Positions 5,564-62,377 of a DNA stretch of 64,000 nt are shown in pieces. Position numbers and translations under genes: made by a program. Location: NCBI RefSeq assembly GCF_006345805.1, contig NW_021832428.1, positions 1 to 64,000 on the forward strand, in the 5' to 3' direction. The notes beneath the pieces are model-generated. The model was not told the DNA's origin. It was given only the letters and a program-made list of their open reading frames with translations, and searched no databases. Position 1 is the stretch's first letter, and the number at the start of each line of letters is the position of its first letter. This stretch comes from Octopus sinensis. Its lineage: Eukaryota.

Positions 5564-6364
5564 ATGCTTTCACTTGTCCTACTTTTTGTTCACGTAGTGG
5601 TCCAAAGAGACTGTGATTTAACAGAAGAGTTTTTGAAAAATTGCTTATTTGAATTAGAGATTTGGAATACTGTGAATTCAATGGAGAAAATGCTGCAGGA
5701 CATAACACAAGAATTTACATTTATAGCAACGTTGTATTTCCAAATGGAGAAATATTCGCGAATTTAACAAACTTGGAGGATTTGTAATTAACATTTTATT
5801 AACACTAGTTACTGTAATGGAAACTCGCTAAAGAGAATACTAAACAACTCATTTGACGGGTTGAATCACCTAGACCATATGTACATTCAAATATTTTGAA
5901 TCACTAGATCACTGTATCGGTGTAGTGACCTTCGTTACGTGAACGTAGATGCATTTGCACGTCTAGTCGCATTTTCAACTCTGTACAAATCTTATTCTAA
6001 CATTAAAGTTACATGCCACCAAATACCATTTTCCAGAGGCCAAAAATCAGTCGTCCCCTCTACATGAAGTATTTTAACTTACTGACTTTGTAGTATTAAT
6101 GACGGCCAGAAAATGTGCATATTCACAAATGGGTCCCAACCCATAATGTATACTTATATATTCAAATATAAGGATTACAACATTGACATATAAGCTAAAT
6201 ATCAAATTAACTGATAAAAGTGTAGAAATGGATCCATTTACAACTCCAGACGCAACACTAATCACTGAGGAAGCCTACGGTGTGTTATTTTACTCACAAT
6301 AGATTGCAACCTCTGCCGATATCCCGGATCAAGCAATCTTCTATGCTGGAAGGATTGCTTTTGA
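5564..6364 (+). CDS. Secreted variable LRR protein, copy 1 (8 exons, 206 aa)
   Basis: GT-AG introns at 5629-57, 5784-5808, 5881-5907, 5983-6008, 6069-93, 6148-72 and 6280-6302 give an open frame: signal peptide MLSLVLLFVHVVVQ, LRRs FANLTNLEDFYCNGNSLKRILNNSFDGLNHLDHISLYRCSDLRYVNVDAFARL, and Cys cap DCNLCRYP..LLCWKDCF*. Confidence 0.85.
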
Positions 6365-7110
6365 CCTACATTTCGGATGTTACTAATTGACTAACCTAAT
6401 TATTTGCTTTAATATTTCCTTGTTCCTCTTTTGCGACACCACTTGCCAAAAATTCTTTTTTAGATGCTATTAATGGATTAGCACAGCTTAGATGGATGTG
6501 AAATAAAACACAATCTTCCCCTGCTTTAATAAGTGTGGCGTTCCTGTAAAAATATAATTTACACAACAATCATGCAAACAATTTAGTGTTCATATCCCTC
6601 ATGAATAAACTAGTCGGTAATCACGTGACAGAAGAAGAATTTGTCAACTTGGACTTTTAACTACCCACTGAAAATCTCAATGAATAGGAATCATTCCCCG
6701 TTGGCCAATACAAACAGTCTCAGCTTCTGAAGATAATGACGATGACTCAGATAAGCAAACAGGCCAGAAAATATAGAGAAATTACTACGCACAAATGTTC
6801 AAAAAATGCTAAATCTGCCACTTTGTTTGCATTCAAGACCCTGCATTACTCGATCCCGTCGACAGACTGATCTATCCAAAAAATAAAACGATTGCTAAAT
6901 CGAGGCTAAAAACGAGCCAATCCTTATTGACAAATTTTTATTAATATCACTTTGTCGTTATAAGTAAATTTGATGTGCAATATACCGGTCTCCTCTCTAT
7001 AGGAATCGGTTTAGAGTGATTTGATTGTATATAATAAAATTATTTGTCACCCTTCGTCCCCTTTGTCGTATATTTATTTTGAAGGAATAATAATTAAGTA
7101 ATAATGAAAT

Positions 7111-7549: not shown

Positions 7550-8338
7550 ATGCTTTCACTTGTCCTACTTTTTGTTCACGTAGTGGTCCAAAGAGACTGT
7601 GATTTAACAGAAGAGTTTTTGAAAAATTTCTTATTTGAATTAGAGATTTGCAAAACTGTGAATTCAATGGAGTAAATGCTGCAGGACATAACACAAGAAT
7701 TTTCATTTTGAGCAACGTTGCACTTCCAAATGGAGAAATATTCTCGAATTTAACGAACTTGGAGAAATTGTAATCAACATTTTATTAATACTAGTTACTG
7801 TGAGGGAGACTCGCTAAAGAGAATACTAAACAACTCATTTGACGGGTTGAAATACCTATACTATATGTACATTCAAATATTTTGAATCACTAGAGAACTG
7901 TATTACTGTAGTGACCTTCGTTACGTGAACGTAGATGCCTTTGCACGTTTAGTCGCATTATCATATCTGTACAAATCTTATTCTAACATTAAAGTTACAT
8001 GCCATCAAATACCATTTTCCAGAAGCCAAAAATCAGTCGTCCCCTCAAAATAGGGTATTTTAACTTACTGACTTTGTAGAATTTATCCAGGCCAGAAAAT
8101 GTGCATATTCACAAATGGGTCCCAACCCATAATGTATACTTATATATTCAAATATAAGGATTACAACATTGACATATAAGCTAAATATCAAATTAACTGA
8201 TAAAAGTGTAGAAATAAATCGAGACGCAACACTAATCAGTGAGGAAGCCTATGGTGTGTTATTTTACTCACAATAGATTGCAACCTCTGCCGATATCCCG
8301 CATCAAGCAATCTTCTATGCCGGAAGGATTGCTTTTGA
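7550..8338 (+). CDS. Secreted variable LRR protein, copy 2 (8 exons, 202 aa)
   Basis: Introns at 7615-43, 7770-94, 7867-93, 7969-94, 8055-79, 8134-58 and 8254-76 (23-29 nt, phases 2,2,2,2,2,2,1). The spliced frame is open for 609 nt to TGA. Confidence 0.85.
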
Positions 8339-8594
8339 CTTACATTTCGGATGTTACTAATTGACTAACCTAATTATTTGCTTTAATATTTCCTTGTTCC
8401 TCTTTTGCGACACCACTTGCCAAAAATTCTTTTTTAGATGCTATTCATGGATTAGCACAGCTTGGATGGATGTGAAATAAAACACAATCTTCCCCTGCTT
8501 TAATAAGTGTGGCGTTCCTGTAAAAATGTAATTTACACAACAATCATGCAAACAATTTAGTGTTCATATCCCTCATGAATAAACTAGTCGTATT

Positions 8595-9400
8595 TGTACG
8601 ACTGTGAGTTCAATGGAGAACATGCTGCGAGACATACAACAACAATTAAAATTACGAGAAACTTTACATTTTCATATGAAGAAATATTCTCGAATTTAAC
8701 AAACTTGGAGACATTGTGATCAACATTTTATTAACACTAGTCAATGTGATGGAGACTCGCCAAAGAGAATACTAAACAACTCATTTTATGGCTTGATTTA
8801 CCTACACTATATGTACATTCAAATATTTTGAATCATTTGATCACTTTAGTAAACTTCGTTACGTGAATGTAGATGCCTTTGAACGTTTAGTCGCATTATC
8901 ATCTCTGTACAAATCTTATTCTAACATTAAAGTTACATACCATCAAATTCCATTTTCCAGTCGCGTTTAATTTAAGAACAATCGTCCCCTCAACCTTCTG
9001 TATTTTAAATTACTGAGTGTATAGTATTATTGATGGCCAGAAAATGTGTATATTCACGAATGGGGCGCTACCCATAATGAATACTTGGATATTCACCTAT
9101 AAGGATTACGAGATTGCCGATCAGTACTTATTCGTTCGCCACCTTGTTATTAACTAACAAAAGTGTGAATATAAAACCAGATATATTTTTCCAAGCAATA
9201 CTAAAATTGGAGCGAGCAGATGATAGATTAGTTTACTCATAATAGATTGCAACCTCTGCTACCATCCCACCCCAATAAACATGATATGCAAAAAGGATCG
9301 TGATCAATCAAAAATTCGAATATCAGTTATTAACTAACCTAGTTATTTGTTCTAATATTTCCTTGTTCTACTTCTTATGTGTTGTTACATGGAGTAGTCA
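8595..9400 (+). pseudogene. Variable LRR family copy 3, 5'-truncated pseudogene
   Basis: It starts inside exon 2. The intron-3 acceptor is mutated, exon 4 has a deletion, exon 5 has a stop, and the intron-6 donor is GT->GA. Confidence 0.8.
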
Positions 9401-9434: not shown

Positions 9435-10811
9435 TCACAGGCGCTGTGAGCGACCGAGCGCAGCGAGCGACTTTGACTACAAATAAAAATATATGATGAT
9501 AAATAATATAGCCCAACCTGTACAGTAATCGTATATATCTTTTGGTGTGGATGCCACATTCGAGTACAATCAGTGTCCTCCACCACCACACAGCTTACGT
9601 TGACACTAATTGTGGGGAGGACACTCGAATAATTAAGGAGTATCAGATTGTACTCATTACTTGAAACCCTCGACAACACAATAGTCTCCGAATTAGTACT
9701 GCACTCCACATCTACTCCCCCACTCACACTCAATCGGTCTATTACAGTTGTCTCCTTTCTCACATCTAACACAGGAAAAATCACAGCATTCGCCCATTTC
9801 AATGTGACATTCTTCTCTTTAATCGTATCCACTTGGATTGTATACACTCCCACTCTGTTGTTGGTGTAGTTCACATCCACATCAAATACATCATTCAACA
9901 CTTTATATGTGCCGACCGGTGTAATCTCTCCACTATCCGTCAAAGAATATATTCCGTTGATGGTTGTATGTGAATACGTTGGCATTCCGTATTTTGCAAT
10001 CTCCTCGTCCGTGGGTTGGATTTTGATCAAATGTTTTCCGCTTATCGGGACTTTTTTGAGGATGACGTCGTAGAACTGAATGGGAGTGTTGCGGGAGGAG
10101 TTGAATGTGATGGCAATGTCCATGAATGACCAGTAGCGTATGTCGAGTTGGTCAAAGGCAATGACTCGCAGGTTAATGGGGAAGAGGGGAGTAAGGGAGG
10201 AGTGGCATACAAGAGTGGGGGATGATTTGTTATTTGTGAGGGAGAACTGACTATCCCCCACCACTTCATACCATGTCTGTCCATTCACCCCCGAGTCTTT
10301 ATCCACAGCTTTCGGGAAGTGGATAATTAACCCAGTTGATAATCCTCCCAGTGTTATGTTCCGTTTATTTCTTGGGAATATTGGGGGGTTGTCATTTATG
10401 TCCAGGACCTATCACTTTAGTTCACCAGTTCTTACTGTTATATATATTTCGACTGTGTATGATTTGTAATCTTTTAGAAGTGTGATTTCTAAGAATATAA
10501 CACCATATTTAAATCCAGAACGAGGTCCGTCGTAGTCTATTCGATCAAGCACCTAATTTAATTAAGTTATATTCATTTAACCATTATTTCTCCAAATATA
10601 TTAGCCGAGAAATACACATTTGAATACTTAATATCTGTGTAGTATCCACATTGCACACCAGTCCCTTGGCAGAAGTTGTATACGACAGTGCCAACAGGAA
10701 TCTCTTCTTTTATTGTCTTGTATAGTTTTATTCTCTCAGAGTGAATGAAAGTGGCGAGTAAAGTGAGTAGTAGAGTATTCTATATAAGTTAGTGTTTACA
10801 CTGCCAACCAT
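9435..10811 (-). CDS. Protocadherin-like gene copy B, 3'-truncated (about four EC repeats, no TM)
   Basis: It has an ATG-only first exon and 29/29/27-nt introns, signal peptide MNTLLLTLLATFIHS, and EEIPVGT, RIDYD, VLDINDNPPIF and AVDKDSG. Homology to copy A stops inside intron 4 at about 9478. Confidence 0.75.
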
Positions 10812-14427: not shown

Positions 14428-14871
14428 ATGTTGTGCTTGTTTGTTAATAATGTTAAGGAATCAAACAATTCCCCTCAAAGACAGACCCCGTTCAATGCTC
14501 ACCGAGGATGAGATTGCAGAGTTGGAAAAACAGGAGTTTGAAGTCGGTCCCTTAAGCCTTCTGACCCAAGCGGTTCGTCAGAATAAGCAAGTGCTGATAA
14601 GCTGCCGAAACAACAAGAAACTATTAGCCCGAGTGAAGGCCTTTGATCGGTCTCCATTAAATATGAGTGTTATAGACATTGTAACATGGTCCTCGAAAAC
14701 GTGAGAGAAATGTGGACGGAAGTGCCCAAGTCTGAGAAGGGACAAAAGTCCAGGCCTGTCAACAAAGACCGGTGTTATTGCCCGTCCTTAGTTTATAGTT
14801 ATATTTCCAAAATGTTCCTCAGAGGGGACACCGTCATTGTCGTCCTCAGCAATCCTGGGGCTTCTCTTTAA
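14428..14871 (+). CDS. SNRPD2: Small nuclear ribonucleoprotein Sm D2
   Basis: Introns at 14433-57, 14650-75 and 14772-98 give [50 protein letters not shown]...[10 protein letters not shown]. Confidence 0.95.
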
Positions 14872-35479: not shown

Positions 35480-36610
35480 ATTCAAGTAAAAATTTATTCC
35501 CATCTATTCAAGCACGTAATCAAAATAATCCTATCTTTATCATTTAAATTAGTTTTACATTTCTGTTTTTAAGATCTGACAATTGAAATAAGGACTTGTC
35601 CAGACAATAATGACAGATACACTTAATGATTTAGCTCTGAAAAATATTAACAGTCATTTTTCCCAATCGTTTAATACAGCCTATTTAAAAAAATGAGTTT
35701 TTATTGTGGCTAAGCATAGAAGATTATTTTAAAAATCATTGGCTTTGTTTAGAAAAAGAAATCGCGCGAGTCCTTGATCTGGTCTTTAAAATTAATTTTT
35801 AACTAGGTCTAAAAATAGGGTGGTAAATATTATTTTAGGAGCTATATAATTTAAATATTGTATTACATGTTGGAGGATAAAATATGGATTGTTATATTCA
35901 AATATTAAAGAACCAGAGATCAAGTTTTACAAGTAAAAATTAATATAATTACTAAATTCTAAAATAAATTATTGAAATGAAAAGAATTTGTTGTGGTTTT
36001 GTAATTTTGGACGCATTTTATTATAGTAGAATAACAATAAAACAAGTTAAAAATGGTTGAAAATATTCCCTAATTTATTGGAGTGCCGTAATTTGAACAT
36101 TTGACTACTTTGGAGTGTTTTTGTGCATCTGGGCAATCAAAAATATTATGGAAAACAATCCATTTTTTGCTGAGACAGATTGACCACAAATAAACTTTTA
36201 ATCTCAAATATGATTACGACTTTATTAAACAGTATATAAACAAATATACATTATCTCAAATATGCTTTCATCGTCGATTTGGAATCTAATGATTCTTTGA
36301 GTATTCACAAATCAGTGGACGGGAAATATATTGCAATGATCGATCTACTTGTTATACTTTTTATTGCTTTGACCAGTTTTGTGTTTATCGTTATCAGAAG
36401 AATATTCTGGTGTCATTTGTAAAGAAAAATATAGAATATGCAACTAACAATGAAATTTACGAGAAGTACAATACTTACAATGAGGATACGTTTCTCGAAA
36501 ATATTCATTCAATTCTGAATTTTCTGAATGATTTTATTATCAAAACTTCTCACGATTTGTTAGAAAATTTGACAGTCAATTTATATTCCGGTGACCATTA
36601 TTGGTGAAAT
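35480..36610 (+). pseudogene. Internally deleted protocadherin-like copy (upstream region joined to TM/tail)
   Basis: 35480-36250 parallels 40200-40840. It then jumps to degenerate HKSVDGKYIA...KKNIEYATNNEIYE, followed by a piece homologous to 46440-46740. Confidence 0.7.
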
Positions 36611-36731
36611 CCCTTTGACTAAGAAGCCCTATCCATTTAAAATTTATATTTTCCCACAAAGTATTATTCCATAAGATATTCGTTCACTGTTTATTTGGTG
36701 GCATCACATTCCTCGAGTATTTACACGTCAC

Positions 36732-37125
36732 TCATAATCGTCGTTTTTCATCTTTCCTTGGATTTTTCTTGATTTTCGTTTTCTCAAAATAAGACAAGTC
36801 CAGAATTAAAATAATATGATTAAAGGTTGCAAAAGTGTCGTACATCTCGTAAATTTCGTTATTTGTCGCATATTCCACATTTTTCTTTACGAATAATGCC
36901 ATAATATTCTTCCGATAACGAAAACCAACAAAACTGGCCAACCCAAAAGTATAACAAAGAGAACAATCATCGCAATATATATCCCGTCCACTGATTTGTG
37001 GACATTCAAGGAATCATTGGATAACAAATTTACGCTGAAAGTATATTTGAGGCAAGAATGCTTTCGTGAAATAGCAGTTATCGTCAATGTATAGTTCTCT
37101 CTCAAAGACGGTTGAATTTCCATAA
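36732..37125 (-). pseudogene. Protocadherin-like 3' fragment (membrane-proximal, TM, tail), frameshifted
   Basis: It reads EIQPSLRENYTLTITAISRKH...SVDGIYIAMIVL...FRYRKNIMALFVKKNVEYATNNEIYE. Confidence 0.8.
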
Positions 37126-40130: not shown

Positions 40131-40864
40131 AATAAATAAAAGAAATCTTAGTTCAAGGTTAATGTACAGGCTGCCAATAGATATCGCATGGCCCATGTGA
40201 ATTAGAATACTATTATTCAAGTAAAAATTAATTCCACCTATTAAAACACGTAATCAATGTAAGCCTATCTTATCATTTAAATAAAAAAGGTTATTATTTA
40301 TGGAAAAAATATGACAAATAATTAATGAATAGACTGAGGCAGTTTAGAAGATCTGACAGTTTAAATAACGATTTGTCCAGACAATAAAAACAGATACACT
40401 GAATGATTTAGGCCTGAAAAATATTAACAGTCAATATTCCCAATCGATTAATATTGTATGGTATCACTTTCCCATATCAAAAAATAAGGAATAAAAAATT
40501 GTTTTTAAAAATCATTGCCTTTGTTTAGAAAAAAGCATCTCGAGAGTGCTTAATCTAGTCTTTAGAATTAATTTGTAATGAATTATTGAAATGATAAGGA
40601 ATGGTGTGGTTTTGTAATTTTAGACGCATTATATTACAGTAAAATAACAATGCAGTGAGTGCAATTAAGACACATTCAAAATGGTTGAAAAATATTCCCT
40701 AATTTATTGGAGTGCCCTGATTTTAACATTTGGAGTGTTTTTGTGCATTTGGGCAATCGAAAATATTATGTAAAACAATCCATGATTTGTTTACTGCTCA
40801 AATATGATTACGGCGTTATTAAACAGTATATAAACAAATATTCCGGTGATGCTAATCCTTCTTA

Positions 40865-43342
40865 ATGGTTGGCAGTGTAAACACTAACTTGTATAGAATA
40901 TACTACTACTCACTTTACTCGCCACTTTCATTCACTCTGAAACCATACAACTATACAAGACAATAAAAGAAGAGATTCCTGTTGGCACTGTCATATACAA
41001 CTTCTGCCAAGGGACTGGTGTGCAGTGTGGAGACTACACAGATATTATGTATTTAAATATGTATTTCTCAGCTAATCTATCAGGAGAAATAATGGTTAAA
41101 TAAATATAACTTAATTAAATTAGGTGGTGTATCGAATAGATTACGAAAAAATTGTTTTGAGCAGTCAAGAGGGAATAATTAACTTGGAACTAATTCTTAC
41201 AAAAAATGATGAAATAGATATAGTAAAAATATATATAACAGTAAGAATTGGTGAACTAAAGTGACAGGTCTTGGACATAAATGACAACCCCCCAATATTC
41301 CCAAGTAATAAACGGAACATAACACTGGGAGGATTATCAACTGGGTTAATTATCCACTTCCCGAAAGCTGTGGATAAAGACTCGGGGGTGAATGCACAGA
41401 CATGGTATGAAGTGGTGGGGGATAGTCAGTTCTCCCTCACAAATAACAAATCATCCCCCACTCTTGTATGCCACTCCTCCCTCACTCCCCTCTCCCCCAT
41501 TAACCTGCGAGTCATTGCCTTTGACCAACTCGACATACACTACTGGTCATTCATGGACATTGCCATCACATTCAACTCCTCCCACAACACTCCCATTCAG
41601 TTCTACGACGTCATCCTCAAAAAAGTCCCGGGAAACAGAAATAAAGTGCTCACAATCCAACCCACGGACGGGGAGATCGCAGAATATGGAAGACCGACGT
41701 ACCCAACACGCGTCTATGGGAAATTTTCGGTGTCATATGACGGAGAGATTACACAGTTCGGCACATATACAGTGTTGAATGATGTATTTGATGTGGATGT
41801 GAAATACACCAACAGCAACAGAGTGGGAGTGTATACAATCCAAGTGGAGACGATTGAAGAGAAGAAGGTCACATTGAAATGGGCGAATGCTGGGAGTTCG
41901 TCTGTTTTAGATGTGACAAAGAAGACAACTTTAATAGACCGATTGAGTGTGAGTGGGGGAGTAGATGTGGAGTGCAGTACTAATTCGGAGACTGTTGTGT
42001 TGTCGAGGGTTTCAAGTAATGAGTACAATCTGATACTCCTTAATTATTCGAGTGTCCTCCCCACAATTAGTGTCAACGTAAGTTGTGTGGTGGTGGAGGA
42101 CACTGATTGTTCTCGAATGTTGCATCCACGTCAAAAGATATATACAATTACTGTACAGGTTGGGATATACTATTTATCATCATATATTTTTATTTGTATT
42201 CTTACTTAAATTTATAATAGATTATGCCTAAAGATTACAATCCCACACCACAATTATTGAAAATATATGAGAATATGCCCATTCATACCGATGTTTATAT
42301 TGGAATTACTGAAGATTGGAGAATAACAGACAATCCAAATTTTAGTGATCAATCATTTAATAAAAGTTTCATATCTTCAAAGAGGTTATTTGACCAAGAA
42401 ATCGAAAAGGTTGTTGATGCTGAGCTTCGCTTACCAAATAATACTTATATCAATAAAACGATTGAAATTATGGACGTGAATGACAATTCTCCAGTGTTTA
42501 CAAACAAGACATGTTCTGTCATTACATTGAGAAATACTTCTCCCGGACAATATTTAACAAATGTATTTGCTGAGGATGCTGATCTTGGAATGAACGGAAA
42601 AATCAATTATAAAGTCATTTCAGTAACGAATATGAATGAAGACATTGGAAGCTGTGATTCAAAAACAAACTTCGCGAATAAATTTAAAATTGATCCGAAT
42701 TCGGGACAGTTATACGTAAATCAGATCATTGAAAATGCGGGATATCTTCTTCTTAATATACAAGCTACTGACTCGGGGTCACAAAAATTATTTGCCAATA
42801 TTCGCTGTCTTGTTCACGCGGTCGATTTGACGTCTATTTTTGATTATTCATTCAACGGGGGTAGTGCAGTGCAGCATCAGAATATTAAGTTGTCACAAAT
42901 TCAACTTGGACAAACTTTTTTGAAGAATACAGCTACTTTGTGGAGTTATTTCTTCGACGATTTTATATTTACAATTCCCGATGATTCCTTGCGGTATTTC
43001 AACGTTGATCCTTATTCCGGAAATGTCAGTTACGTTGGAGAAATTCAACCGTCTTTGACAAACAACTATACTTTGACGATAACTGCTTTCTCACGAAAGC
43101 ATGTTTACCTGAAATATAATTTCAGTGTAAATTTGTTATCGCAAAGTTCTTCGACTGTTCATCAATCTGTGGACAAAAAATATATTGCTATCATCGTCCT
43201 GCTTGTTGTACTTCTTACTGGTTTGGGCATTTTTGTTGGTTTTCGTTACCGCAAAAATATTCTGTCATTTATGAAGAAAAATGAGGAATATGCAACAAAC
43301 AACGAAATCTACGAATGTCAAGATGTTTACAACAACCTTTAA
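40865..43342 (+). CDS. Protocadherin-like single-pass membrane protein, copy A (5 exons, 776 aa)
   Basis: Introns lie at 40868-96, 41095-123, 41241-67 and 42159-220. It has a signal peptide, cadherin motifs (VLDINDNPPIF, AVDKDSG, IMDVNDNSPVF, AEDADLGMNG, ATDSG), TM IAIIVLLVVLLTGLGIFVGF and a short tail ending VYNNL*. Confidence 0.9.
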
Positions 43343-44035
43343 TTTCATTATATTAATTATGGACCTGTATTATTTTAATCATATTGTTTTAAAATAATTT
43401 ATGTTAGTTACGTGAAAGTAGCAGAGAAAGTAGGAATCATTTGCTAATTTTCTGAAGTCTACCTATATTCAGCAATGTTACTTTTACCGGTTATATTGTT
43501 CTTTTCATGTAACTTTAAACTGGATTGATATCCACCCAAAGCGCTATTTGGAGAATCTTTCATAAATAAGACTGCCATTTCTAATTTCATTAATACTACA
43601 ATCTTTTAAAAATCTTTTAAAAAAAGAACTATTGCGAGGAAACTGTCAATAGACCAGTATTTTTAAATTGTTGGAAGAATAATAATGGAAATATATTTGC
43701 AATAAAAGAAGATGTTTTACATCGTGATATTCAATCATTTAAACAAGAAATATGAGTGGTAACAACATACTAACATGTTTGGAAATATTTTTTACAGGGC
43801 TATTCAGTTCCATAGCCATGTATATTTAGTTCTATACTCCGGTTTATTCAGTTTCATAAAAAATCAATTTAAATCAAAAAAATAGTATTTTGAACTATTA
43901 TTTATTCTATTAAGAGGAAAATTGGCTCTCTTATCCCAATCATATTAGTGTAAAAATTAACTAACATTAACAGCTAATTTCAATTGAAATAATCATAACA
44001 TTGATAAATGATTGTATCTGTGTTTAGCTTAGATT

Positions 44036-44220
44036 CTAGGAATTCGCACAAGATACGAATTTTTTTTGAGCCGGAATAAACTTCAAAACCGAGAACTCCG
44101 TAACTCGTGATCAAGGATAAAACATTGATGTTCTGTTAACAATTACATCGAGAAAATCTGACATCATTGATTTCAATCGGAAAATTGCCACTGAACGTTG
44201 AGTGTGTCGATTGAAGCCAT
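44036..44220 (+). repeat. About 185-bp direct repeat, mate at 45507-45690, flanking LRR copy 4
   Basis: It shares CTAGGAATT...GAGCCGGAATA...CCGAGAACTCCG...TCTGACATCATTGATTTCAATCGGAAAATTGCCACT...GTGTGTCGA, about 80% identical by eye. Confidence 0.85.
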
Positions 44221-44550
44221 AGTTTGTGACAATATCCCAAATCTTTTATGGTTCCTATTCTTTGAGATTTTCTAAATTCTCCTTCTGTCACGTCATTACC
44301 GACTAGTTTATTCATGAGGGATATGAACACTAAATTGTTTGCATGATTGTCGTTTAAATTACATTTTTACAGGAATGCCACACTTATTAAGCAGGGGAAG
44401 ATTGTGTTTTATTTCACATCCATCCAAGCTGTGCTAATCCATGAATAGCATCTAAAAAAGAATTTTTGGCAAGTGGTGTCGCAAAAGAGGAACAAGGAAA
44501 TATTAAAGCAAATAATTAGGTTAGTCAATTAGTAACATCCGAAATGTAGG

Positions 44551-45348
44551 TCAAAAGCAATCCTTCCAGCATAGAAGATTGCTTGATCCGGGATATCGGC
44601 AGAGGTTGCAATCTATTGTGAGTAAAATAACACACCATAGGCTTCCTCACTGATTAGTGTTGCGTCTCGAGCTCGATTTAGATATATTTCTCCACTTTTA
44701 TTAGTTAATTTGATATTTAGATCATCTGTCACTGGCGTAATCCTTATATTTTAATATCTAAGTATACATTATGGGTTGGGACCCATTTGTGAATATGCAC
44801 ATTTTCTGGCCGTCAATAATACTACAAAGTCAGTAAGTTAAAATACTTCATGTAGACGGGACGACTGATTTTTGGCCTCTGGAAAATGGTATCTAGTGGC
44901 ATGTAACTTTAATGTTAGAATAAGATTTGTACAGAGTTGACAATGCGACTAAACGTGCAAAGGCATCTACGTTCACGTAACGAAGGTCACTACAGTCATA
45001 CAGATCTCTAATGATTCAAAATATTTGAATGTACATTTGGTATAGGTGAATCAACCCGTCAAATGAGTTGTTTAGTATTCTCTTTAGCGAGTCTCCATTA
45101 CAGTAACTAGTGTTAATAAAATGTTGATTACAATGTCTTCAAGTTTGTTAAATTCGAGAATATTTCTCCATTTGGAAATTTAACGTTTTTATTAATTTCA
45201 ATTGTTGTTGTACGTCCCGCAGCATTTGCTCCATTAAATTCACAGTTTTGCAAAACTCTGATTCAAATAAGCAATTTTTCAAAAACTGTTGTAAGTCACA
45301 GTCACTTTGGACCACTAAGTCAACAAAAAGTAGGACAAGTGAAAGCAT
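44551..45348 (-). CDS. Secreted variable LRR protein, copy 4 (8 exons, intact)
   Basis: It has the same seven introns. The spliced frame is MLSLVLLFVDLVVQSDCDLQQVLQNC...LKTFYCNGD...LIHLYQIDLYDC...LSTLYMPLD...CWKDCF*. Confidence 0.85.
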
Positions 45349-46399
45349 TCTAATTAAAGCTAATATTTTATTGTGAATAACTCATTGGTTAGACATCAAA
45401 TAAATTAAAAACTTTATTAACTAAACCCAAAACCGAAAATGATAAGAAATTAACTAATTATTGATCCTACTTTTTAAAAATTTTTCTCCTCTTGAGGGAA
45501 CTCCATCTAGGAATTTGGATAAGTTACAAAAATTTTTTTGAGCCGGAATACACTTCAAATCCGAGAACTCCGTTACTCGTGATTATGAATAAAACACTGA
45601 TGTTCTGTTCACAATTACATCGAGTTAATCTGACATCATTGATTTCAATCGGAAAATTGCCACTAAACGTTGAGTGTGTCGAGTGAGCCATATTTATCGT
45701 TTGTGACTACATCACAAACTTTATAGCTTTAAATATTGTTGGTTGCGATACAAAGATATCTAGACGACAAAGCGTTGTCTCATTAGTAGTAATGAGTTAT
45801 TACTTACTAAGAAGATGGCTTGCACTGTATGGTCTTGGTTAATAATAATCAATTTATAGTTATTTAAAAGTTAATAGAGTCATTTATGTACGGAAATTCT
45901 CAGACTGTTCTCGAGAATGGCAATAGAAATTCTTTGCTAAAACGAAACGGAAAGGGCTTTGAATACGATTTGTGCAAAGGGTAGTCTGCGCGACACAAAG
46001 GAACTAAATTGATTTTGGTTTTTTATGTGTTCTCGGCAGTGCTGATAATAATATGTAACGTGGAATCGACCAAAAAGGCACGAGTTTCTCGCCGACAGTC
46101 GGGAGAGTTTCTACTAAATTTCAAAGTCAAAAAAGATGTAGAGAAACTTTCAAAATGAATTAAAAAAGAAAACCTTTTTCAGAAGAAGGCCATTCTTTCA
46201 AACATAAGAAATTCGGCCAGTGGCAATAATTTTAAAGAATGCTCCCACTTGATTTAAAATTGAGGAACTCGAGGACTTTTTGAAAAGCAATGTTAAATAA
46301 AAAATGACTTTCGAAAAAAGTTTGTTTCATAAGGAGCAGTGTCATTTTCAGGATTGTCGTCTATTTTCGCATATTCTAGACGGGAATAGAGTAAAATAA

Positions 46400-46869
46400 C
46401 CTTAGACGATTTTCTTGTCGAAAATAAGGTTGGGGATAAGTTTCTCGAAAATACTGCTTCAATCCCGAATTGTCTAAATTATTTTATTTCAAGACATTTC
46501 TTAGAATATCTAACAGACAATTCATATCCTAGAAATGTGACCATTATTGGTGAAATCCCGTTGACTGGCAAGACCTACCCATTCACATTTTTAAATTTAT
46601 CCAAAAAGTATTATTCCGTGCGATATTCGTTCATTGTTTATTTGGTGGCATCACATTTTTCGATTATTCACATATCACTCATAATTGTCGTGTGCTTACT
46701 ATATTTCCTTGGATTTGTCTTGATTTTCGTTTTCAGTTATCAAAAGTGTATTATCAAGATTTTTAAAAAAAACGCCGACCTGTATTGTGGCAATAACAGA
46801 AATTATGGACTGTGCGCATTTAATCATTTATTCGAATTTTTATTATTTTGTGTAAATTGTTTAATGTAA
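46400..46869 (+). pseudogene. Divergent protocadherin-family fragment (membrane-proximal domain, TM, tail)
   Basis: IFLSKIRLGDKFLENTAS and NVTIIGEIP...YSFIVYL, plus a hydrophobic TM and KKNADLYCGNNRNY, align with the copy A C-terminal region. There are stops upstream. Confidence 0.6.
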
Positions 46870-47910: not shown

Positions 47911-48782
47911 TCAAATGGGGGGTAATTTAAGTCCCGTGATTTGTGGGTTGCGACGGGCAATGTCTCGCTTCCCGGGGGTCTTGTAGTCGTAGGGACAGTC
48001 GTGTGCTTCCGCATATCGGTGGATACTACAAAACTGTCTCCCACACCTAAATAGACACTCCCACCGACCTGCAGGTGTACTCCCCCAACATCCCCACTTT
48101 CCTCCGACACACAAAACAACGACGATTCCGGCATTTGTTGGCAGGAAACATCTACAAACATTGCCAGACACTCCTCACTTTCGGACTATTCTTCCCGGGG
48201 GATAACCAAGAAGACAACTCACTCAATTCGGTTCTTTTCGACAACAAATAAATTTTGGTCGGACTTTGTTCAGTTTTGAGCATTTGATCGATTAATTTGT
48301 CGAATTTGCTGTTTTCCTTAGTCAAAGTGAACTTTTCAATTTCAAAGACATTTTCGACTGTTCAAAGTGAGCGAACAAGCCAACCAATTGAGTGGCCGAA
48401 TGGACCGGACTGCATTTCGACCACCAAAACGAGGTTGGAGCCGTGGAGGATTCCTAATTCGAGCAGGGAATTTGAATCGTTCAGTTTTTTGCCCTTAAAA
48501 AGCAGAACTTGGGAATCCGTGGGGATATCTCATATTTAATGCCCGATTACTTTCGAATTTATAAATTTTCTCTTTTAGGTCGAAAACTGATTTGAAATAG
48601 GAAATTGTGATTTCGTATTTAATGCCAGTAATTGTCCTCACGCCGACTGTTATGCGGGAGGAGATCGATTTGGAGGGATTACCAAAGTAGGCCTTCTCAT
48701 TTCCTATAATATTAAAAGTAGTTGTCACTATTACCTGTGGGGGCTGTTCCCCTCTCTCCATTTCCCCCATTGCCATTGTCAT
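47911..48782 (-). CDS. ZFAND4: Ubiquitin-like plus AN1-type zinc finger protein (ZFAND4/ANUBL1-like)
   Basis: VGVRTITGIKYEITISYFKSVFDLKEKI is ubiquitin-like. RRCFVCRRKVGMLGEYTCR|CGRQFCSIHRYAEAHDCPYDYK spans a 22-nt intron (48047-68). Confidence 0.75.
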
Positions 48783-48819
48783 CCGAATCGTAGTTCATCC
48801 CACAACGAAGGTTCCCTAA

Positions 48820-49999
48820 ATGACATATTTTATTGGTTTATTACGATTTATTCAATGTATATTATTTTCATCTCTAAATGTAATGAAAATAACTCAATAA
48901 GGCTATGATTGCATATCCCATTCGCAATAAAGCATACGTTAAATGACGTAGAATTACTGGAACAATTCCTGGACCCTGACTCTGTCAATATGATAAGAGT
49001 ACTACTATCGAACACAAAGCTCAAGGTGCGGGTCGGCACGGCGTTTTCCGTGAATTCACGTGCAACGTCGGTACCCCTCAGGGAGACGCCCTCTCGCCGT
49101 TGCTATTCGTGATCTATCTGGAGACGGCACTACGAGACCTTCGAAAATTCTATGCTGGCAATATCGTTGAAATTGTATATGCAGATGACGTCGACTTCGT
49201 GTCAGACGACAAATCGGCCTTACTTCGACTCCTTGAAGTGGCACCTGCTGAGCTGAACAGATGGTTCCTTAAAATGAACGTTGGAAAAACCGACATCGTT
49301 GAAATCATGAGGATGGAGAGCAGCTCAAGTGAAGCCTGGCGCAAAACGAACAAACTCGGTTCTCTACTTGGGGACGGCCATGATATTGTCAGAAGAAAGG
49401 CTCTCGCTTGGGCCACGATGAACAAGATAAAGAAAGAGTGGATCGGCAAACGACGACTCTGTACGTCACTTCGTCTGAGGATGTATGAAGCCTTTGTCAA
49501 ACCAATCCTGACATATAATTCGGCGACCTGGGGAATGTCTAGTACTGAACAACGTGGACTTGATTCTTTTCACCGCAGGCAACTTAGATCCCTACTGGGA
49601 TTGAACTGGCCTATAAGAATCAACCAGGAATCGCTATACAATAGATGCAGAACTGGCCCTCTGAGTGTGGAAATCGTCAATATGCGGTGGAGGTTATTTG
49701 GCCATATTCTACGAATGGACATGCTTGCCCCAGCTAACATAGCAATGGAGGGCTACTTCCTGAAAGAGGGATCGAGCTTCCGTGGACGTCCACGTGTTAC
49801 GCTGCCGGAAACACTTGACGGAGACCTGAAATGTGTGAAGAAAAGGCTAAGGAGTGGTGAGGATCTGGACGAGCTGAGGAAACTCGCTCACGACAGAGGA
49901 GGTTGGAGGAGGCTGGTTCAAAGGATTGTTTTTAATGCTGCACGAGTAAAATTATAACTAATATGATTCTACGTATGTTGCAAATAATAATAATAATAA
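48820..49999 (+). mobile_element. 5'-truncated RTE-clade non-LTR retrotransposon
   Basis: It reads VP(QG)DALSPLLF (frameshift), YADDVDF, KPILTYNSATW and RPRVTL, with a (TAA)n tail at 49984-99. Confidence 0.85.
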
Positions 50000-50102
50000 A
50001 TGACGTAGGTGTCATCAGAGGAGAGTAGTCCTTCAGTTTAAAGGCACTCCCTGCAGTCGAAAGTGGACAAAAGGAGTGAATTGTTAGTGAAAGTAATTAA
50101 AG

Positions 50103-50747
50103 TTAATTGTCGGGCTTAATTTTGAACATTTTCTTGAACAAATGGAGGACGTTGTGTGACTTGGCACGACAAAACAAATGTCTGGCAAGGGTGTGTGAGG
50201 GTTGTGAGGCCTTGCGGACATCATAGAGGGTAGGACTGCCGGTCTTAACTTGGAAGTATTGCATAAGGAGTGCCTGAAAAAAGTGTTTGACAGAGCAGTC
50301 ATTAATGACGGACAGGTGGTAGACATGGGAAAAGAATTGTGAGTGAGTGGTGACCTCGTAGACTGTACTGTCGGAGTGATTGTCGACGAAGGCAGTCAGG
50401 GGCATGGACTTGTTCCTCAAAAAGAGGATTTGGTTGAAAATGTCCTTCACTTTTTGGAAGGAGTACTTGTCCTTGTATTTATAGACGAGGATGATTATGT
50501 CCGCCTCGATTATGGCGATTTTGAGCATAGCGGGACTGCAGAAGGTGCCACACGTGTCGACGATTTGGAAGGTGGCCGTGTGATTGAGTTGAGCTTCGTA
50601 GACGTCGCCGATGGTGGGTTCGTAGGTGATGAGTTTCTTTCCCCACAAATAATTGGAGATGAGTGTAGTCTTGCCTGTGTTCTTGTACCCCATTACATAT
50701 ATTTTGAACTTGATTATGCCATTCAGAGAAATGCTCATGTCGTCCAC
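50103..50747 (-). CDS. Ras-family small GTPase (DIRAS/RASD-like)
   Basis: It has P-loop GYKNTGKT, YEPTIGDVY and IVDTCG.F..PAML, in a 214-aa single exon. Confidence 0.8.
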   Translation of the reverse strand: MDDMSISLNGIIKFKIYVMGYKNTGKTTLISNYLWGKKLITYEPTIGDVYEAQLNHTATFQIVDTCGTFCSPAMLKIAIIEADIIILVYKYKDKYSFQKVKDIFNQILFLRNKSMPLTAFVDNHSDSTVYEVTTHSQFFSHVYHLSVINDCSVKHFFQALLMQYFQVKTGSPTLYDVRKASQPSHTLARHLFCRAKSHNVLHLFKKMFKIKPDN

Positions 50748-50817
50748 TGCCTCGGCATTGGCTTATAATCAATCGCCCTCGTCAATGTCCTTATTTTAGT
50801 AATAATATTAATTGAAC

Positions 50818-51365: not shown

Positions 51366-51735
51366 TAATTCACTCCATTCATTCACAGTGTGCTTTTCTT
51401 ACCCTCAAACTCAACAGTTGGTAGCATTTAACTCCAGGGATATACCCTTAGCGTACGTTAAATACGTAGATGTTATCAGAGGAAAGTACTCCTTGCAGTC
51501 TAAACAGGACAAAAAAACAAATTGCCAAGGTATTCTACGATTGAGGCCATACTTGTGTGACTCCGTAGAATACACGTTCTTCATAGACAATAAAATGACC
51601 TCTCAAGGATGACCAAAAGTGTTCGCTCACTGTGTTATTAATCCTAGTCAATATCTGCAATATAATCTTGCTGCTTTGAAATGCACTGGATGATTCAATT
51701 GAGTATTAATAAGAGTACAAGTAATGGCAAATACA

Positions 51736-60760: not shown

Positions 60761-61573
60761 CCTACTAAACAGAGATCACTTATTGGGCATACCACACAAC
60801 CAAACAACAATTCCTTTATTTTTATGTCATTTCATTATTACTTAATTATTATTCCTTCAAAATAAATATACGACAAAGGGGACGAAGGGTGACAAATAAT
60901 TTTATTATATACAATCAAATCACTCTAAACCGATTCCTATAGAGAGGAGACCGGTATATTGCACATCAAATTTACTTATAACGACAAAGTGATATTAATA
61001 AAAATTTGTCAATAAGGATTGGCTCGTTTTTAGCCTCGATTTAGCAATCGTTTTATTTTTTGGATAGATCAGTCTGTCGACGGGATCGAGTAATGCAGGG
61101 TCTTGAATGCAAACAAAGTGGTAGATTTAGCATTTTTTGAACATTTGTGCGTAGTAATTTCTCTATATTTTCTGGCCTGTTTGCTTATCTGAGTCATCGT
61201 CATTATCTTCAGAAGCTGAGACTGTTTGTATTGGCCAACGGGGAATGATTCCTATTCATTGAGATTTTCAGTGGGTAGTTAAAAGTCCAAGTTGACAAAT
61301 TCTTCTTCTGTCACGTCATTATCGACTAGTTTATTCATGAGGGATATGAACACTAAATTGTTTGCATGATTGTTGTGTAAATTACATTTTTACAGGAATG
61401 CCAGACTTATTAAGCAGGGGAAGATTGTGTTTTATTTCACATCTATCTAAGCTGTGCTAATCCATTAATAGCATCTAAAAAAGAATTTTTGGCAAGTGGT
61501 GTCGCAAAAGAGGAACAAGGAAATATTAAAGCAAATAATTAGGTTAGTCAATTAGTAACATCCGAAATGTAGG

Positions 61574-62377
61574 TCAAAAGCAATCCTTCCAGCATAGAAG
61601 ATTGCTTGATGCGGGATATCGGCAGAGGTTGCAATCTATTGTGAGTAAACTAACACACCATAGGCTTCCTCAGTGATTATTAGTGTTGCGTCTGTTGTTG
61701 CAAATGGATCCATTTCTACACTTTTATCAGTTAATTTGATATCTAGCTGATTTGTCACTGTTGTAATCCTTATATTTGAATATATAAGTATACATTATGG
61801 GTTGGGACCCATTTGTGAATATGCACATTTTCTGGCCGTCAATAATACTACAAAGTCAGTAAGTTAAAATACCTCATGTAGAGGGGAAGACTGATTTTTG
61901 GCCTCAGGAAAATGGTATTTAATGGCATGTCACTTTAATGTTAGAATAAGATTTGTACAGGCTTAATGATCCGACTAGACTTGCAAAGGCATCTACGTTC
62001 ACGTAACGAAGGTCACTACAGGATTGCAGTTCTCTAATGATTCAAAATATTTGAATGTACATATGGCGTAGGTGAATCAACCCGTCAAATGAGTTGTTTA
62101 GTATTCTCTTTAGCGAGTCTCCACGACAGTGACTAGTGTTAATAAAATGTTGATTACAATTGCTCCAAGTACGTTAAATTCGAGAATATTTCTCCATTTG
62201 GAAATAGAACGTTGCTAGAAATTGCAATTATTGTGTTATGTTCTGCAGCATTTGCTCCATTGAATTCACAGTTTTGCAAAACTCTGATTCAAATAAGAAA
62301 TTTTTCAAAAACTGTTGTGTTAAATCACAGTCTCTTTGGACCACTAAGTCAACCAAAAGTAGGACAAGTGAAAGCAT
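61574..62377 (-). CDS. Secreted variable LRR protein, copy 5 (8 exons, intact)
   Basis: It has the same seven introns. The frame reads MLSLVLLLVDLVVQRDC...LEQFHCRGD...LIHLRHIELQSC...SLSLDMPLN...CWKDCF*. Confidence 0.85.

What the first reader, a model, noticed from the sequence alone, without database searches (positions are those of the whole stretch)
40200..45500. Variable cadherin and variable LRR genes recur as a convergent pair: candidate two-component recognition cassette
Seen: cadherin A (+) ends tail-to-tail with LRR copy 4 (-) at 43.3-44.5 kb, and LRR copies 1-3 (+) run tail-to-tail into cadherin B (-) at 9.4 kb. A further divergent cadherin fragment follows at 46.4 kb. Both families carry diversified exposed residues. 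Established: linked polymorphic receptor/ligand pairs underlie several allorecognition and self-incompatibility systems (e.g. Brassica SRK/SCR, Ciona s-/v-Themis). Inference: the secreted LRR and the membrane cadherin may be co-inherited partners. This is speculative.
Basis: inference. Interest (0 to 1): 0.75.

Follow-up and report, generated by a model that had tools for sequence, protein, structure and literature searches.

The report
Linked variable cadherin and LRR genes
A protocadherin-like membrane gene and small secreted leucine-rich-repeat genes do recur tail-to-tail, but as copies of one duplicated block in what looks like dicyemid-parasite DNA inside an octopus assembly, and the LRR genes carry a clear signature of diversifying selection.

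Summary
Cadherin A (40865-43342, +) ends tail-to-tail with LRR copy 4 (45348-44528, -). LRR copies 1-3 run into cadherin B at 9.4-9.5 kb. A third collinear copy lies on another contig.

Raw ORFs look broken, but 20-29-nt GT..AG introns interrupt the genes. The SmD2 gene in the same window has proven 26- and 27-nt introns. Among animals, introns this short are reported only from myxobolid myxozoans (fish parasites) and Dicyema, a kidney parasite of Octopus sinensis. The window (O. sinensis contig VCDQ01006348.1) is therefore probably dicyemid DNA.

Spliced, cadherin A is a 779-aa protein matching solved protocadherins at E=2e-33. The LRR genes encode about 200-aa proteins with a signal-peptide-like start, and their profile matches solved LRR ectodomains at E=2e-11.

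LRR exons vary more than their introns and flanks (21.5% vs 9.4% variable sites). dN/dS is 1.1-2.2, with changes at x positions of the LRR strands. The cadherins are mosaics made by gene conversion.

The recurrence is block duplication, with intergenic DNA 90-98% identical. Copy B is truncated, LRR copy 3 is a fragment, LRR copies outnumber cadherins, and no co-divergence is visible. A cognate LRR-cadherin partnership stays untested.

The parts
40865..43342 (+). Cadherin A, a protocadherin-like gene. Exons 40865-40876, 40897-41094, 41124-41240, 41268-42158, 42221-43342; introns of 20, 29, 27 and 62 nt. Product 779 aa: signal peptide, EC repeats, TM segment (YIAIIVLLVVLLTGLGIFVGF), tail of about 30 aa.
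   Evidence: Spliced model. Pfam Cadherin E=3.7e-14. PDB protocadherins E=2e-33, with EC1-EC2 aligned without gaps across both micro-intron junctions. NCBI's model P0001 covers only 41553-43342.
43343..44527 (.). Tail-to-tail spacer between cadherin A and LRR copy 4. It includes one copy of a roughly 212-nt direct repeat (44035-44246) whose twin lies at 45506-45722.
   Evidence: The spacer is 90-98% identical to the L002 paralogue and differs from it at 3.7% of aligned sites.
44528..45348 (-). LRR copy 4. Exons 45348-45287, 45257-45132, 45106-45035, 45007-44908, 44878-44826, 44742-44634, 44612-44528. Product 201 aa: signal-peptide-like start, a two-Cys N-terminal segment, then LRRs.
   Evidence: Coordinates and stop-free translation. 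Pfam LRR_5 E=7.3e-5 and LRR_8 E=6e-4, both below cut-off. The family profile matches LRR ectodomains in PDB.
5564..6387 (+). LRR copy 1. Exons 5564-5628, 5658-5783, 5809-5880, 5908-6007, 6037-6089, 6173-6281, 6303-6387; introns of 29, 25, 27, 29, 83 and 21 nt. Product 202 aa.
   Evidence: Splicing raises Pfam LRR_8 from 13.4 bits (E=0.067) to 25.2 bits (E=1.4e-5). The first five exons are well supported. The last two rest on in-frame indels and reading frames kept open in five copies.
7550..8361 (+). LRR copy 2, a tandem duplicate of copy 1 (period 1986 nt). Same exon plan; product 198 aa.
8593..9330 (+). LRR copy 3, a decayed fragment. Exon 1 is missing, the intron 3 acceptor reads TTG, there is an 8-nt deletion in exon 4, and stops occur in frame.
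9518..10811 (-). Cadherin B, exons 1-4 only (10811-10800, 10779-10582, 10552-10436, 10408-9518). These 406 codons are intact, but the last exon (one Pfam EC repeat, TM, tail) is missing.
61551..62377 (-). LRR copy 5. Its 2.4-kb block (60827-63250) is 95% identical to 4714-7112. The reading frame is open (203 aa), but the intron 4 acceptor is CTG instead of CAG. No cadherin-like sequence lies next to it.
35565..37120 (.). Internally deleted cadherin relic. The 5' flank (similar to 40342-40841) is joined to the 3' end of the last exon (similar to 43105-43314). An inverted copy of that 3' end follows.
   Evidence: Self-BLAST, 74-81% identity.
46393..46869 (+). Divergent cadherin C-terminal fragment: membrane-proximal ectodomain, TM segment and tail.
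   Evidence: BLASTP against the last exon of cadherin A gives 31% identity, E=2e-12. It is 78% identical in DNA to 36481-36783. No convincing upstream exons were found.
14494..14871 (+). snRNP SmD2 gene with 26-nt (14646-14671) and 27-nt (14772-14798) introns. It serves as a calibrating gene: it shows that this genome really uses micro-introns.
   Evidence: DNA and reading frames. The spliced product matches human SmD2 at E=6e-49, without gaps across both junctions.

Best explanation
The region holds a duplicated gene block. Each block has a protocadherin-like type-I membrane gene, followed tail-to-tail by one or more small LRR genes with a signal-peptide-like start.

Shown:
- Both gene kinds are interrupted by 20-29-nt GT..AG introns, plus a few of 62-83 nt.
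- That intron size, the base composition and the repeat load fit a dicyemid (Dicyema-like) genome that was assembled together with its host, Octopus sinensis.
- The pair recurs because the duplication unit contains both genes. It was copied at least three times and then partly decayed. Cadherin B lost its TM exon, LRR copy 3 is a fragment, and the L002 cadherin carries an 845-nt insertion.
- The copies diversify in two ways. Gene conversion moves segments between cadherin paralogues. LRR exons have more substitutions than their own introns and flanks, mostly non-synonymous.
- The LRR changes sit at the x positions of the xLxLxxN/C strands, while the Leu/Ile/Phe/Cys framework is invariant.

Inferred:
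- The LRR proteins are secreted binding modules, and those x positions face the concave surface that binds ligand.
- That surface is under diversifying selection against a changing extracellular ligand. The ligand could be a host or a conspecific surface molecule.
- The cadherin is a variable adhesion or recognition receptor.
- Whether the two proteins bind each other is open.
For: Source of the DNA:
- The window equals bases 1-64000 of O. sinensis contig VCDQ01006348.1.
- SmD2 has proven 26- and 27-nt introns. A coactosin-like gene has a 23-nt intron and another gene has 46- and 50-nt introns.
- Window GC is about 36%, and LINE and DDE elements are present.
- The D. japonicum genome has 36.7% GC, 49% repeats, many LINEs and a mean intron of 38 bp, and its specimens were taken from O. 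sinensis (PMC6736024).
- Among 51 animal genomes surveyed, introns under 30 bp were found only in myxobolids and Dicyema (PMC13644364).
- Close relatives of the cadherin exist only as O. sinensis models.

Gene models:
- Spliced cadherin A matches protocadherins at E=2e-33, with the alignment crossing both micro-intron junctions.
- Exons 1-4 are open and 1218 nt long in all three cadherin copies, with GT/AG conserved.
- The LRR model is stop-free in five of six copies.
- The LRR profile matches PDB LRR ectodomains at 2e-11.
- Three LRR introns sit at the same repeat position and phase.
- Indels inside the LRR exons are all multiples of three.

Block duplication:
- Window 40375-45595 is collinear with L002 8783-14765 at 90-98% identity, spacer included.
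- The two window arms are inverted copies of each other.

Diversification:
- LRR dN/dS is 1.09-2.22 in all ten pairs.
- LRR dN is 0.083-0.177, against intron divergence of 0.019-0.070.
- Variable sites make up 21.5% of exon columns and 9.4% of non-coding columns (Fisher p=4e-8). By codon position they split 50/37/40.
- The cadherin has mosaic patches at 41141-41232 and 41628-41745.
- A second copy of the first 34 kb of the window, on contig VCDQ01002361.1, is 99.64% identical. Fifteen of its 74 mismatches cluster in cadherin B. At 12 of those 15 sites the other copy carries the base found in paralogue A or L002, which marks a conversion tract.
Against: - No transcript or expression evidence was available.
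- No LRR relative exists in the protein databases. However, that search used an unspliced composite sequence.
- Pfam LRR scores stay below the gathering cut-offs.
- The 3' part of the LRR model (83-nt intron and the last two exons) is less secure. Threading a frame with introns of 18-90 nt is not unusual in shuffled sequence (134 of 500 shuffles with up to six introns; 208 of 500 with up to seven). Only the five-exon core beats shuffles (5 of 500).
- Cadherin dN/dS is 0.6-0.9. That fits relaxed constraint as well as diversifying selection.
- Several copies are visibly broken and the region is rich in transposons.
- Excess exon divergence could partly reflect conversion from unseen divergent paralogues rather than selection on point mutations.
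- The dicyemid origin is inferred. No Dicyema sequence could be compared.
Confidence: 0.62

Rival explanations
1. Cognate two-component recognition cassette. The secreted LRR protein binds the neighbouring cadherin. Each haplotype carries a matched pair, as in self-incompatibility or allorecognition loci.
For: - The genes are tightly linked, convergent and co-duplicated at three loci.
- Both are extracellular and variable.
- One cadherin variable patch lies in EC1.
- From my own knowledge, not tested here: Listeria internalin A binds E-cadherin EC1 through its LRR concave face. That is a structural precedent for an LRR-cadherin complex.
Against: - Block duplication alone explains the linkage, since the spacer is 90-98% identical between loci.
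- Copy numbers do not match: eight LRR units against three cadherins plus relics.
- LRR copy 5 and the two upstream units have no cadherin neighbour.
- There is no co-divergence. Cadherins B and L002 are the closest pair, while their LRR neighbours are among the most divergent.
- Gene conversion reshuffles cadherin segments between loci.
- No binding or expression data exist.
Confidence: 0.12
2. Decaying pseudogene array. The block is neutral, duplication-prone, repeat-rich DNA whose reading frames are open only by recency.
For: - Raw six-frame ORFs are short (longest LRR ORF 67 aa) and full of stops.
- Canonical LRR motifs in raw frames are no more frequent than chance.
- NCBI called no LRR gene here.
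- Cadherin B is truncated, LRR copy 3 is broken, the L002 cadherin has an insertion, and relics lie at 35.5-37.1 and 46.4 kb.
- Cadherin dN/dS is near 1.
Against: - The apparent stops sit in conserved 20-29-nt GT..AG introns of the kind proven in SmD2.
- Spliced products gain strong homology.
- Five LRR copies and three cadherin 5' halves stay open under one shared splice model.
- Indels in exons are multiples of three.
- Exons are more variable than introns and flanks, whereas neutral decay predicts equality.
Confidence: 0.1
3. Genuine octopus genes belonging to the known cephalopod protocadherin expansion, as the NCBI name 'protocadherin Fat 3-like [Octopus sinensis]' implies.
For: - The contig is part of the O. 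sinensis assembly and is annotated as such.
- From my own knowledge: octopus genomes carry large protocadherin expansions and have a similar GC content.
Against: - A housekeeping gene in the same window has 26- and 27-nt introns. Among animals these are reported only for myxobolids and Dicyema.
- No relative in any other octopus appears among 5.8 billion word-indexed proteins or 1.84 billion exhaustively scanned ones.
- The LINE reverse transcriptase has only an O. sinensis near-match, and the next hits are at 45% identity or less.
Confidence: 0.08

Closest known systems
Protocadherins (clustered and delta types; cephalopod protocadherin expansions)
   Same: - Signal peptide, tandem EC repeats with DxNDN linkers, a single TM segment and a short tail.
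- Best PDB matches are Pcdh10, Pcdh gamma and Pcdh alpha.
- Multi-copy, with gene conversion between paralogues.
   Different: - No shared constant cytoplasmic exons.
- Pfam recognises only one EC repeat, and the middle 250 residues are very divergent.
- The gene is split by 20-29-nt introns.
- Only the two other models of this family, P0002 and P0141, are close relatives anywhere in the public protein sets.
- The probable host genome belongs to an animal of about 30 cells without neurons.
Hypervariable extracellular LRR binders, such as lamprey variable lymphocyte receptors
   Same: - A small LRR protein with a signal-peptide-like start.
- Variability is concentrated at the x positions of the xLxLxx strands on an invariant framework.
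- VLRB is among the PDB hits (3e-7).
- Partial LRR units lie beside complete genes.
   Different: - The genes are complete in the germline.
- There is no sign of somatic assembly.
- The neighbouring partial unit (copy 3) is decayed rather than a usable donor.
- There is no canonical Cys-rich LRRCT cap.
- Diversity lies between paralogues.
Linked polymorphic receptor/ligand loci (Brassica SRK/SCR, Ciona s-/v-Themis, Hydractinia Alr)
   Same: Two extracellular, variable genes in tight physical linkage are inherited and duplicated as one unit.
   Different: - No evidence of cognate binding.
- No haplotype-level co-variation.
- Unequal copy numbers.
- Active gene conversion rather than suppressed recombination.
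Expanded variant surface or secreted families of parasites in repeat-rich regions, such as BspA-type LRR proteins of Trichomonas
   Same: - Lineage-specific and multi-copy.
- Set in transposon-rich DNA.
- Fast-evolving extracellular repeats.
- Weak Pfam LRR_5 (BspA-type) matches in all five copies.
   Different: - Only about eight units were seen in the DNA available.
- No evidence of expression switching.
- A metazoan parasite, with the LRR genes paired with a cadherin.
Internalin A - E-cadherin complex
   Same: From my own knowledge: an LRR concave face binds cadherin EC1. That makes a direct LRR-cadherin contact physically plausible. One cadherin variable patch here lies in EC1.
   Different: That is a bacterial invasin acting on a host cadherin. 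Here both genes are in one genome, and no interaction has been shown.

Membership tests
Cadherin superfamily (protocadherin-like) | Tandem extracellular cadherin repeats with Ca-binding linker motifs (DxNDN, DRE-like) | tested here: met
   Pfam Cadherin E=3.7e-14 for residues 507-604. PDB protocadherins E=2e-33, with EC1-EC2 (residues 22-167) and residues 477-610 aligned. The motifs LDINDNPPIF, MDVNDNSPVF and RIDYE are visible in the sequence.
Cadherin superfamily (protocadherin-like) | Type-I membrane topology: signal peptide and a single TM segment | tested here: met
   Read directly from the spliced product: N-terminal MVGSNILLLTLLATFIHS and the hydrophobic stretch YIAIIVLLVVLLTGLGIFVGF near the C-terminus. 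No topology predictor was run. The 12-nt first exon and 20-nt first intron are the least certain part of the model.
Clustered protocadherins | Variable exons spliced to shared constant cytoplasmic exons | tested here: not met
   Each copy has its own TM segment and short tail in the same last exon. No constant exons were seen.
Leucine-rich repeat proteins | Tandem LxxLxLxxN/C repeats recognised by family profiles | tested here: met
   A profile of five spliced copies gives 119 PDB hits at E of 1 or less. The 60 listed are nearly all LRR ectodomains; the best is 2.2e-11. Pfam LRR_8 reaches 1.4e-5 and LRR_5 7.3e-5, both below the gathering cut-offs. Without splicing the signal is absent.
VLR-type somatically assembled LRR receptors | Incomplete germline gene completed from flanking donor cassettes | tested here: not met
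   Four window copies and the L002 copy are complete and have open frames in the genomic DNA. The only partial unit in the window is frameshifted.
Linked receptor-ligand recognition loci (SRK/SCR, Themis type) | Tight linkage of two polymorphic extracellular genes | tested here: met
   A 1.2-kb tail-to-tail spacer, with the pair co-duplicated at three loci. Block duplication is sufficient to explain this.
Linked receptor-ligand recognition loci (SRK/SCR, Themis type) | Matched co-variation of the two genes across haplotypes or copies | tested here: inconclusive
   Only three pairs are available. The cadherin distances group B with L002, but the LRR distances do not. Gene conversion blurs any tree.
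Linked receptor-ligand recognition loci (SRK/SCR, Themis type) | Cognate-specific binding between the two products | not testable with these tools
Dicyemid (Dicyema) genome | Spliceosomal introns mostly under 30-40 nt | tested here: met
   SmD2 26 and 27 nt. Coactosin-like gene 23 nt. Cadherin 20, 29, 27 nt. LRR 29, 25, 27, 29, 21 nt. Literature.
Dicyemid (Dicyema) genome | Sequence identity to a dicyemid assembly or transcriptome | not testable with these tools
   No dicyemid sequence collection could be searched. The protein searches returned only O. sinensis-labelled near-matches.

The most novel reading that the evidence does not exclude
Dicyemids, animals of about 30 cells, carry a polymorphic extracellular recognition system. 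Secreted LRR proteins with hypervariable concave faces dock onto EC1 of co-inherited variable protocadherin-like receptors, in an internalin/E-cadherin-like geometry. The system would mediate kin, species or gamete recognition, or niche-specific attachment in the octopus kidney, and the cassettes would diversify by duplication and gene conversion.
Probability: 0.12. Interest if true: 0.85.

Novelty: new variant of a known kind. Interest (0 to 1): 0.6.

Why it matters
1. Two sequences named as Octopus sinensis proteins in public databases, 'protocadherin Fat 3-like' and 'fat-like cadherin-related tumor suppressor homolog', are probably truncated mis-models of dicyemid genes. Counts of octopus protocadherins, and any use of these contigs as octopus DNA, would be affected.

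2. Standard gene finders miss genes with 20-29-nt introns. A whole LRR family here is unannotated.

3. Dicyemids are among the simplest animals, and little is known about how they recognise host tissue or each other. A secreted LRR family with dN/dS above 1 at its presumed binding face, next to gene-converting cadherins, gives concrete candidate molecules. The pairing hypothesis can be tested directly with the published Dicyema genome and stage-specific RNA-seq.

Tried and rejected
1. I first read the LRR units and the cadherin 5' end as pseudogenes. Every frame carried stops shared by all copies. Pfam LRR_8 gave only E=0.067. No protein homologue appeared. LRR motif counts were at chance level. 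I rejected this reading once conserved 25-29-nt GT..AG elements were seen to restore the frames and canonical motifs, and SmD2 proved that such introns exist here.

2. My first frame-threading script had a bookkeeping bug and I rewrote it.

3. Threading with a wide intron range is not significant for the LRR gene (208 of 500 shuffles; 134 of 500). I do not use it as evidence beyond the five-exon core (5 of 500 shuffles with introns of 20-35 nt).

4. Alternative LRR 3' ends were considered and set aside because copies carry stops or frame-breaking deletions there. These were the frame-1 reading 'CYFTHNRLQPLP...', an 81-nt intron after DKS, and exons beyond 6387.

I tried no other route to a structure.

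6. L002 never appeared as a file for scripts. I pasted 6.3 kb of it into.

7. I took P0141 for a fourth independent locus. It turned out to lie on a second, 99.64%-identical copy of arm B on contig VCDQ01002361.1.

8. Literature searches found nothing on dicyemid cadherins or LRR proteins.

Full report
WHAT THE WINDOW IS

The 372-aa ORF at 42224-43342 is 100% identical to part of an NCBI model, 'protocadherin Fat 3-like [Octopus sinensis]' (P0001). That gene lies at 41553-43342 of contig VCDQ01006348.1 (86,781 bp), the same coordinates as in the window. The window is therefore the first 64 kb of that contig. GC is about 36%. LINE-type reverse transcriptases, an endonuclease and a DDE transposase are scattered through it.

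FIRST PASS AND WHY IT MISLED

Self-comparison shows an inverted segmental duplication:
- 9475-10880 matches 42201-40797 at 89.9% (the cadherin).
- About 1.3-kb units at 5302-6616, 7288-8590, 8592-9368, 44274-45506 and 61297-62535 match one another at 76-95% (the 'LRR' units).

In raw six-frame translation the LRR units have no ORF longer than 67 aa, and stops and frame changes are shared by all copies. Pfam gave only LRR_8 at E=0.067. A composite query found no homologue. LxxLxLxxN motifs were no more frequent than in shuffles. NCBI annotated no gene there. The cadherin's EC1 region also carried shared stops. That looked like a pseudogene array.

MICRO-INTRONS

In the three-copy cadherin alignment, the 'defects' are conserved GT..AG elements of 29 and 27 nt. 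Removing them restores the frame and yields canonical cadherin motifs...SGEIM|VVYRIDYE... and ...IYIT|VLDINDNPPIF. The LRR units behave the same way.

The test case is a housekeeping gene in the same window. The SmD2 gene at 14.49-14.87 kb needs a 26-nt and a 27-nt intron. The spliced product then matches human SmD2 at E=6e-49, without gaps across both junctions. A coactosin-like gene needs a 23-nt intron, and a gene at 12.0-13.0 kb needs introns of 46 and 50 nt.

A survey of 51 animal genomes found introns under 30 bp only in myxobolid myxozoans and in Dicyema japonicum (PMC13644364). The D. japonicum genome has 36.7% GC, 49% repeats with many LINEs, and a mean intron of 38 bp. Its specimens are collected from the renal sacs of Octopus sinensis (PMC6736024).

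Close relatives of the cadherin exist only as O. sinensis models, both in a word-indexed search of 5.8 billion proteins and in an exhaustive scan of 1.84 billion representatives. The LINE reverse transcriptase behaves likewise.

I conclude, at roughly 85% confidence, that the contig is dicyemid DNA assembled with its host. No dicyemid sequence could be compared directly.

GENE MODELS

Cadherin A has exons 40865-40876, 40897-41094, 41124-41240, 41268-42158 and 42221-43342, with introns of 20, 29, 27 and 62 nt. The last is the only intron NCBI modelled. The product is 779 aa with a signal peptide, EC repeats, a TM segment and a tail of about 30 residues.
- It matches solved protocadherins at E=2e-33, and EC1-EC2 aligns across both micro-intron junctions.
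- Pfam recognises one EC repeat (E=3.7e-14).
- Exons 1-4 are open, 1218 nt long and have conserved splice sites in A, B and the L002 copy.
- The 12-nt first exon and 20-nt first intron are the least certain elements.

The LRR model, in copy 1 coordinates, has exons 5564-5628, 5658-5783, 5809-5880, 5908-6007, 6037-6089, 6173-6281 and 6303-6387. Its introns are 29, 25, 27, 29, 83 and 21 nt, and the product is about 202 aa.
- The model is stop-free in copies 1, 2, 4, 5 and the L002 copy.
- Copy 5 has a mutated intron 4 acceptor.
- Copy 3 lacks exon 1, has a broken acceptor and an 8-nt deletion.

Support for the LRR model:
- Pfam LRR_8 rises from 13.4 to 25.2 bits on splicing, and the match crosses a junction.
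- A profile of the five products hits LRR ectodomains in PDB: LRRTM 2.2e-11, VLRB 2.9e-7, LGR4, LRRC4 and the Nogo receptor.
- Three introns occupy the same repeat position and phase (LxxLxx|hydrophobic, phase 2).
- All indels inside exons are multiples of three (-3, -12, +3; +9 and +3 in copy 3), whereas 1-nt and 26-nt indels occur outside them.
- With introns limited to 20-35 nt, only 5 of 500 shuffles can be threaded as far as the five-exon core.

With a wide intron range, threading is not significant. The last two exons and the 83-nt intron are therefore provisional. If that intron is not removed, the protein ends after 139 aa.

THE PAIR

Cadherin A stops at 43342 and LRR copy 4 stops at 44528 on the opposite strand, leaving a 1185-nt spacer. 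On the other arm, LRR copies 1, 2 and 3 precede cadherin B, whose last retained exon ends at 9518. About 2.3 kb present in arm A is missing there: the last cadherin exon, the spacer and the LRR 3' tail.

A third locus, on contig VCDQ01002361.1 (L002), is collinear with window 40375-45595 at 90-98% identity, spacer included. Its last cadherin exon carries an 845-nt insertion.

P0141, found by the exhaustive scan, is not a fourth locus. Window 1-34068 is 99.64% identical to another part of that same contig, so this is a haplotig or assembly duplicate of arm B.

Two further, more divergent LRR units lie just upstream of the window start, with no cadherin match in the 5.6 kb held there. LRR copy 5 also has no cadherin neighbour. 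Cadherin relics lie at 35.5-37.1 kb and 46.4-46.9 kb.

The recurrence is real, but it is what copying one block produces.

VARIATION

LRR genes:
- dN/dS is 1.09-2.22 in all ten pairs, and pooled pN/pS is 1.33.
- dN is 0.083-0.177. Divergence is 0.019-0.070 in the introns and 0.021-0.078 in the flanks.
- Variable sites are 21.5% of exon columns, 8.4-9.6% of intron columns and 5.5-10.8% of flank columns. Exons against all non-coding gives Fisher p=4e-8.
- Variable sites split 50/37/40 over codon positions 1, 2 and 3.
- Replacements sit at the x positions of the strands, for example T-x-I-x-I-x-S-N, L-x-x-F-x-C-x-G and L-x-x-I-x-L-x-x-C. The Leu, Ile, Phe, Cys and Asn framework is invariant.

This is the pattern expected for diversifying selection on the ligand-binding concave face. 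Conversion from unseen divergent paralogues may contribute.

Cadherin genes:
- dN/dS is 0.74-0.88 for exons 1-4 and 0.58 for the first part of exon 5.
- Variable sites split 48/42/51 over codon positions.
- Two sharply bounded mosaic patches stand out. In EC1 (41141-41232), A differs from B and L002. In the mid-ectodomain (41628-41745), B differs from A and L002. Indels there are in frame.
- The two near-identical copies of arm B differ at 74 sites in 34 kb, and 15 of these cluster within 9971-10549 in the cadherin. At 12 of the 15, the other copy carries the base of paralogue A or L002. This marks a recent gene-conversion tract.

INTERPRETATION

The anatomy is well supported: two real extracellular gene families, linked and co-duplicated, both diversifying.

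The idea that they are cognate partners is neither shown nor excluded.
- Against it: unequal copy numbers, LRR units without cadherins, no co-divergence among three pairs, and conversion between loci.
- For it: only linkage, the extracellular location of both products, a variable patch in EC1, and the known internalin-E-cadherin precedent (my own knowledge).

I put it at about 12%.

My preferred reading has three parts. The pairing reflects the duplication unit. The LRR proteins are secreted binders evolving against a changing ligand, either host-derived or conspecific. The cadherin is a variable adhesion or recognition receptor.

No literature on dicyemid cadherins or LRR proteins was found.

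LIMITS

There are no transcript data and no dicyemid reference sequence. Only about 100 kb of the source genome could be examined.

Noticed in passing
window 13950-14871, 11974-12963: Housekeeping genes with micro-introns: SmD2 (26 and 27 nt), a coactosin/ADF-H-like gene (23 nt), and an unidentified minus-strand gene (46 and 50 nt). Together they suggest that O. sinensis contig VCDQ01006348.1 is dicyemid-like contaminant DNA, not octopus.
   Followed up: yes
window 1-34068 vs L003 (VCDQ01002361.1:250400-284493): The first 34 kb of the window is 99.64% identical to part of a second contig, so it is a haplotig or duplicate assembly. The 74 mismatches are not spread evenly. They cluster in cadherin B (9971-10549), at 13-14 kb, at 15-16 kb (35 mismatches and 38 gap columns) and at 18-19 kb. 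Most 1-kb bins have none.
   Followed up: partly
P0141 / L003 10001-29746; P0021; P0001: The NCBI gene models on these contigs are artefacts of the micro-introns. P0141 is a 19.7-kb chimera: it reads through a cadherin micro-intron and then through the antisense strand of LRR units. P0021, 'importin subunit alpha-3-like', carries a LINE reverse-transcriptase segment. P0001 starts at an internal Met and lacks the signal peptide, EC1 and part of EC2.
   Followed up: partly
L002 11324-12168: An 845-nt insertion in the last exon of the third cadherin copy contains about 60-nt tandem units built on telomere-like CCCTAA repeats. Its nature (transposon or healed break) is unknown.
   Followed up: no
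L003 35391-36897 (just upstream of window position 1): Two further LRR units, 73-81% identical to copy 4, lie outside the window. No cadherin match occurs in the 5.6 kb of sequence held there.
   Followed up: partly
window 44035-44246 and 45506-45722: A roughly 212-nt direct repeat (86% identity) brackets LRR copy 4 and recurs in L002. It looks like the footprint of a tandem array with a 1472-nt period. It carries a minus-strand ORF ('STHSTFSGNFPIEINDVR...') of unknown meaning.
   Followed up: no
window 19227-19609; 12939-13214: Tandem repeats of 119 nt (three copies, 74-81% identity) and 92 nt (three copies, 67-82% identity). The second lies at the 5' end of the minus-strand gene at 12-13 kb.
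   Followed up: no
window 48000-60000: A block of higher GC (44-49%, against about 35% elsewhere). It holds reverse-transcriptase fragments and long ORFs without Pfam matches (for example 57584-58939, 451 aa). It is probably a different class of mobile element.
   Followed up: no
window 3884-4062 and 7111-7289: A 179-nt piece of the 3' end of a non-LTR retrotransposon ORF is repeated at 99% identity between LRR copies 1 and 2. It accounts for part of the 1986-nt tandem period.
   Followed up: no
L002 2043-3387 (-): Two adjacent ORFs about 7 kb upstream of the third cadherin copy look by eye like TIR-type and SAM-type domains. This was not checked with any profile.
   Followed up: no
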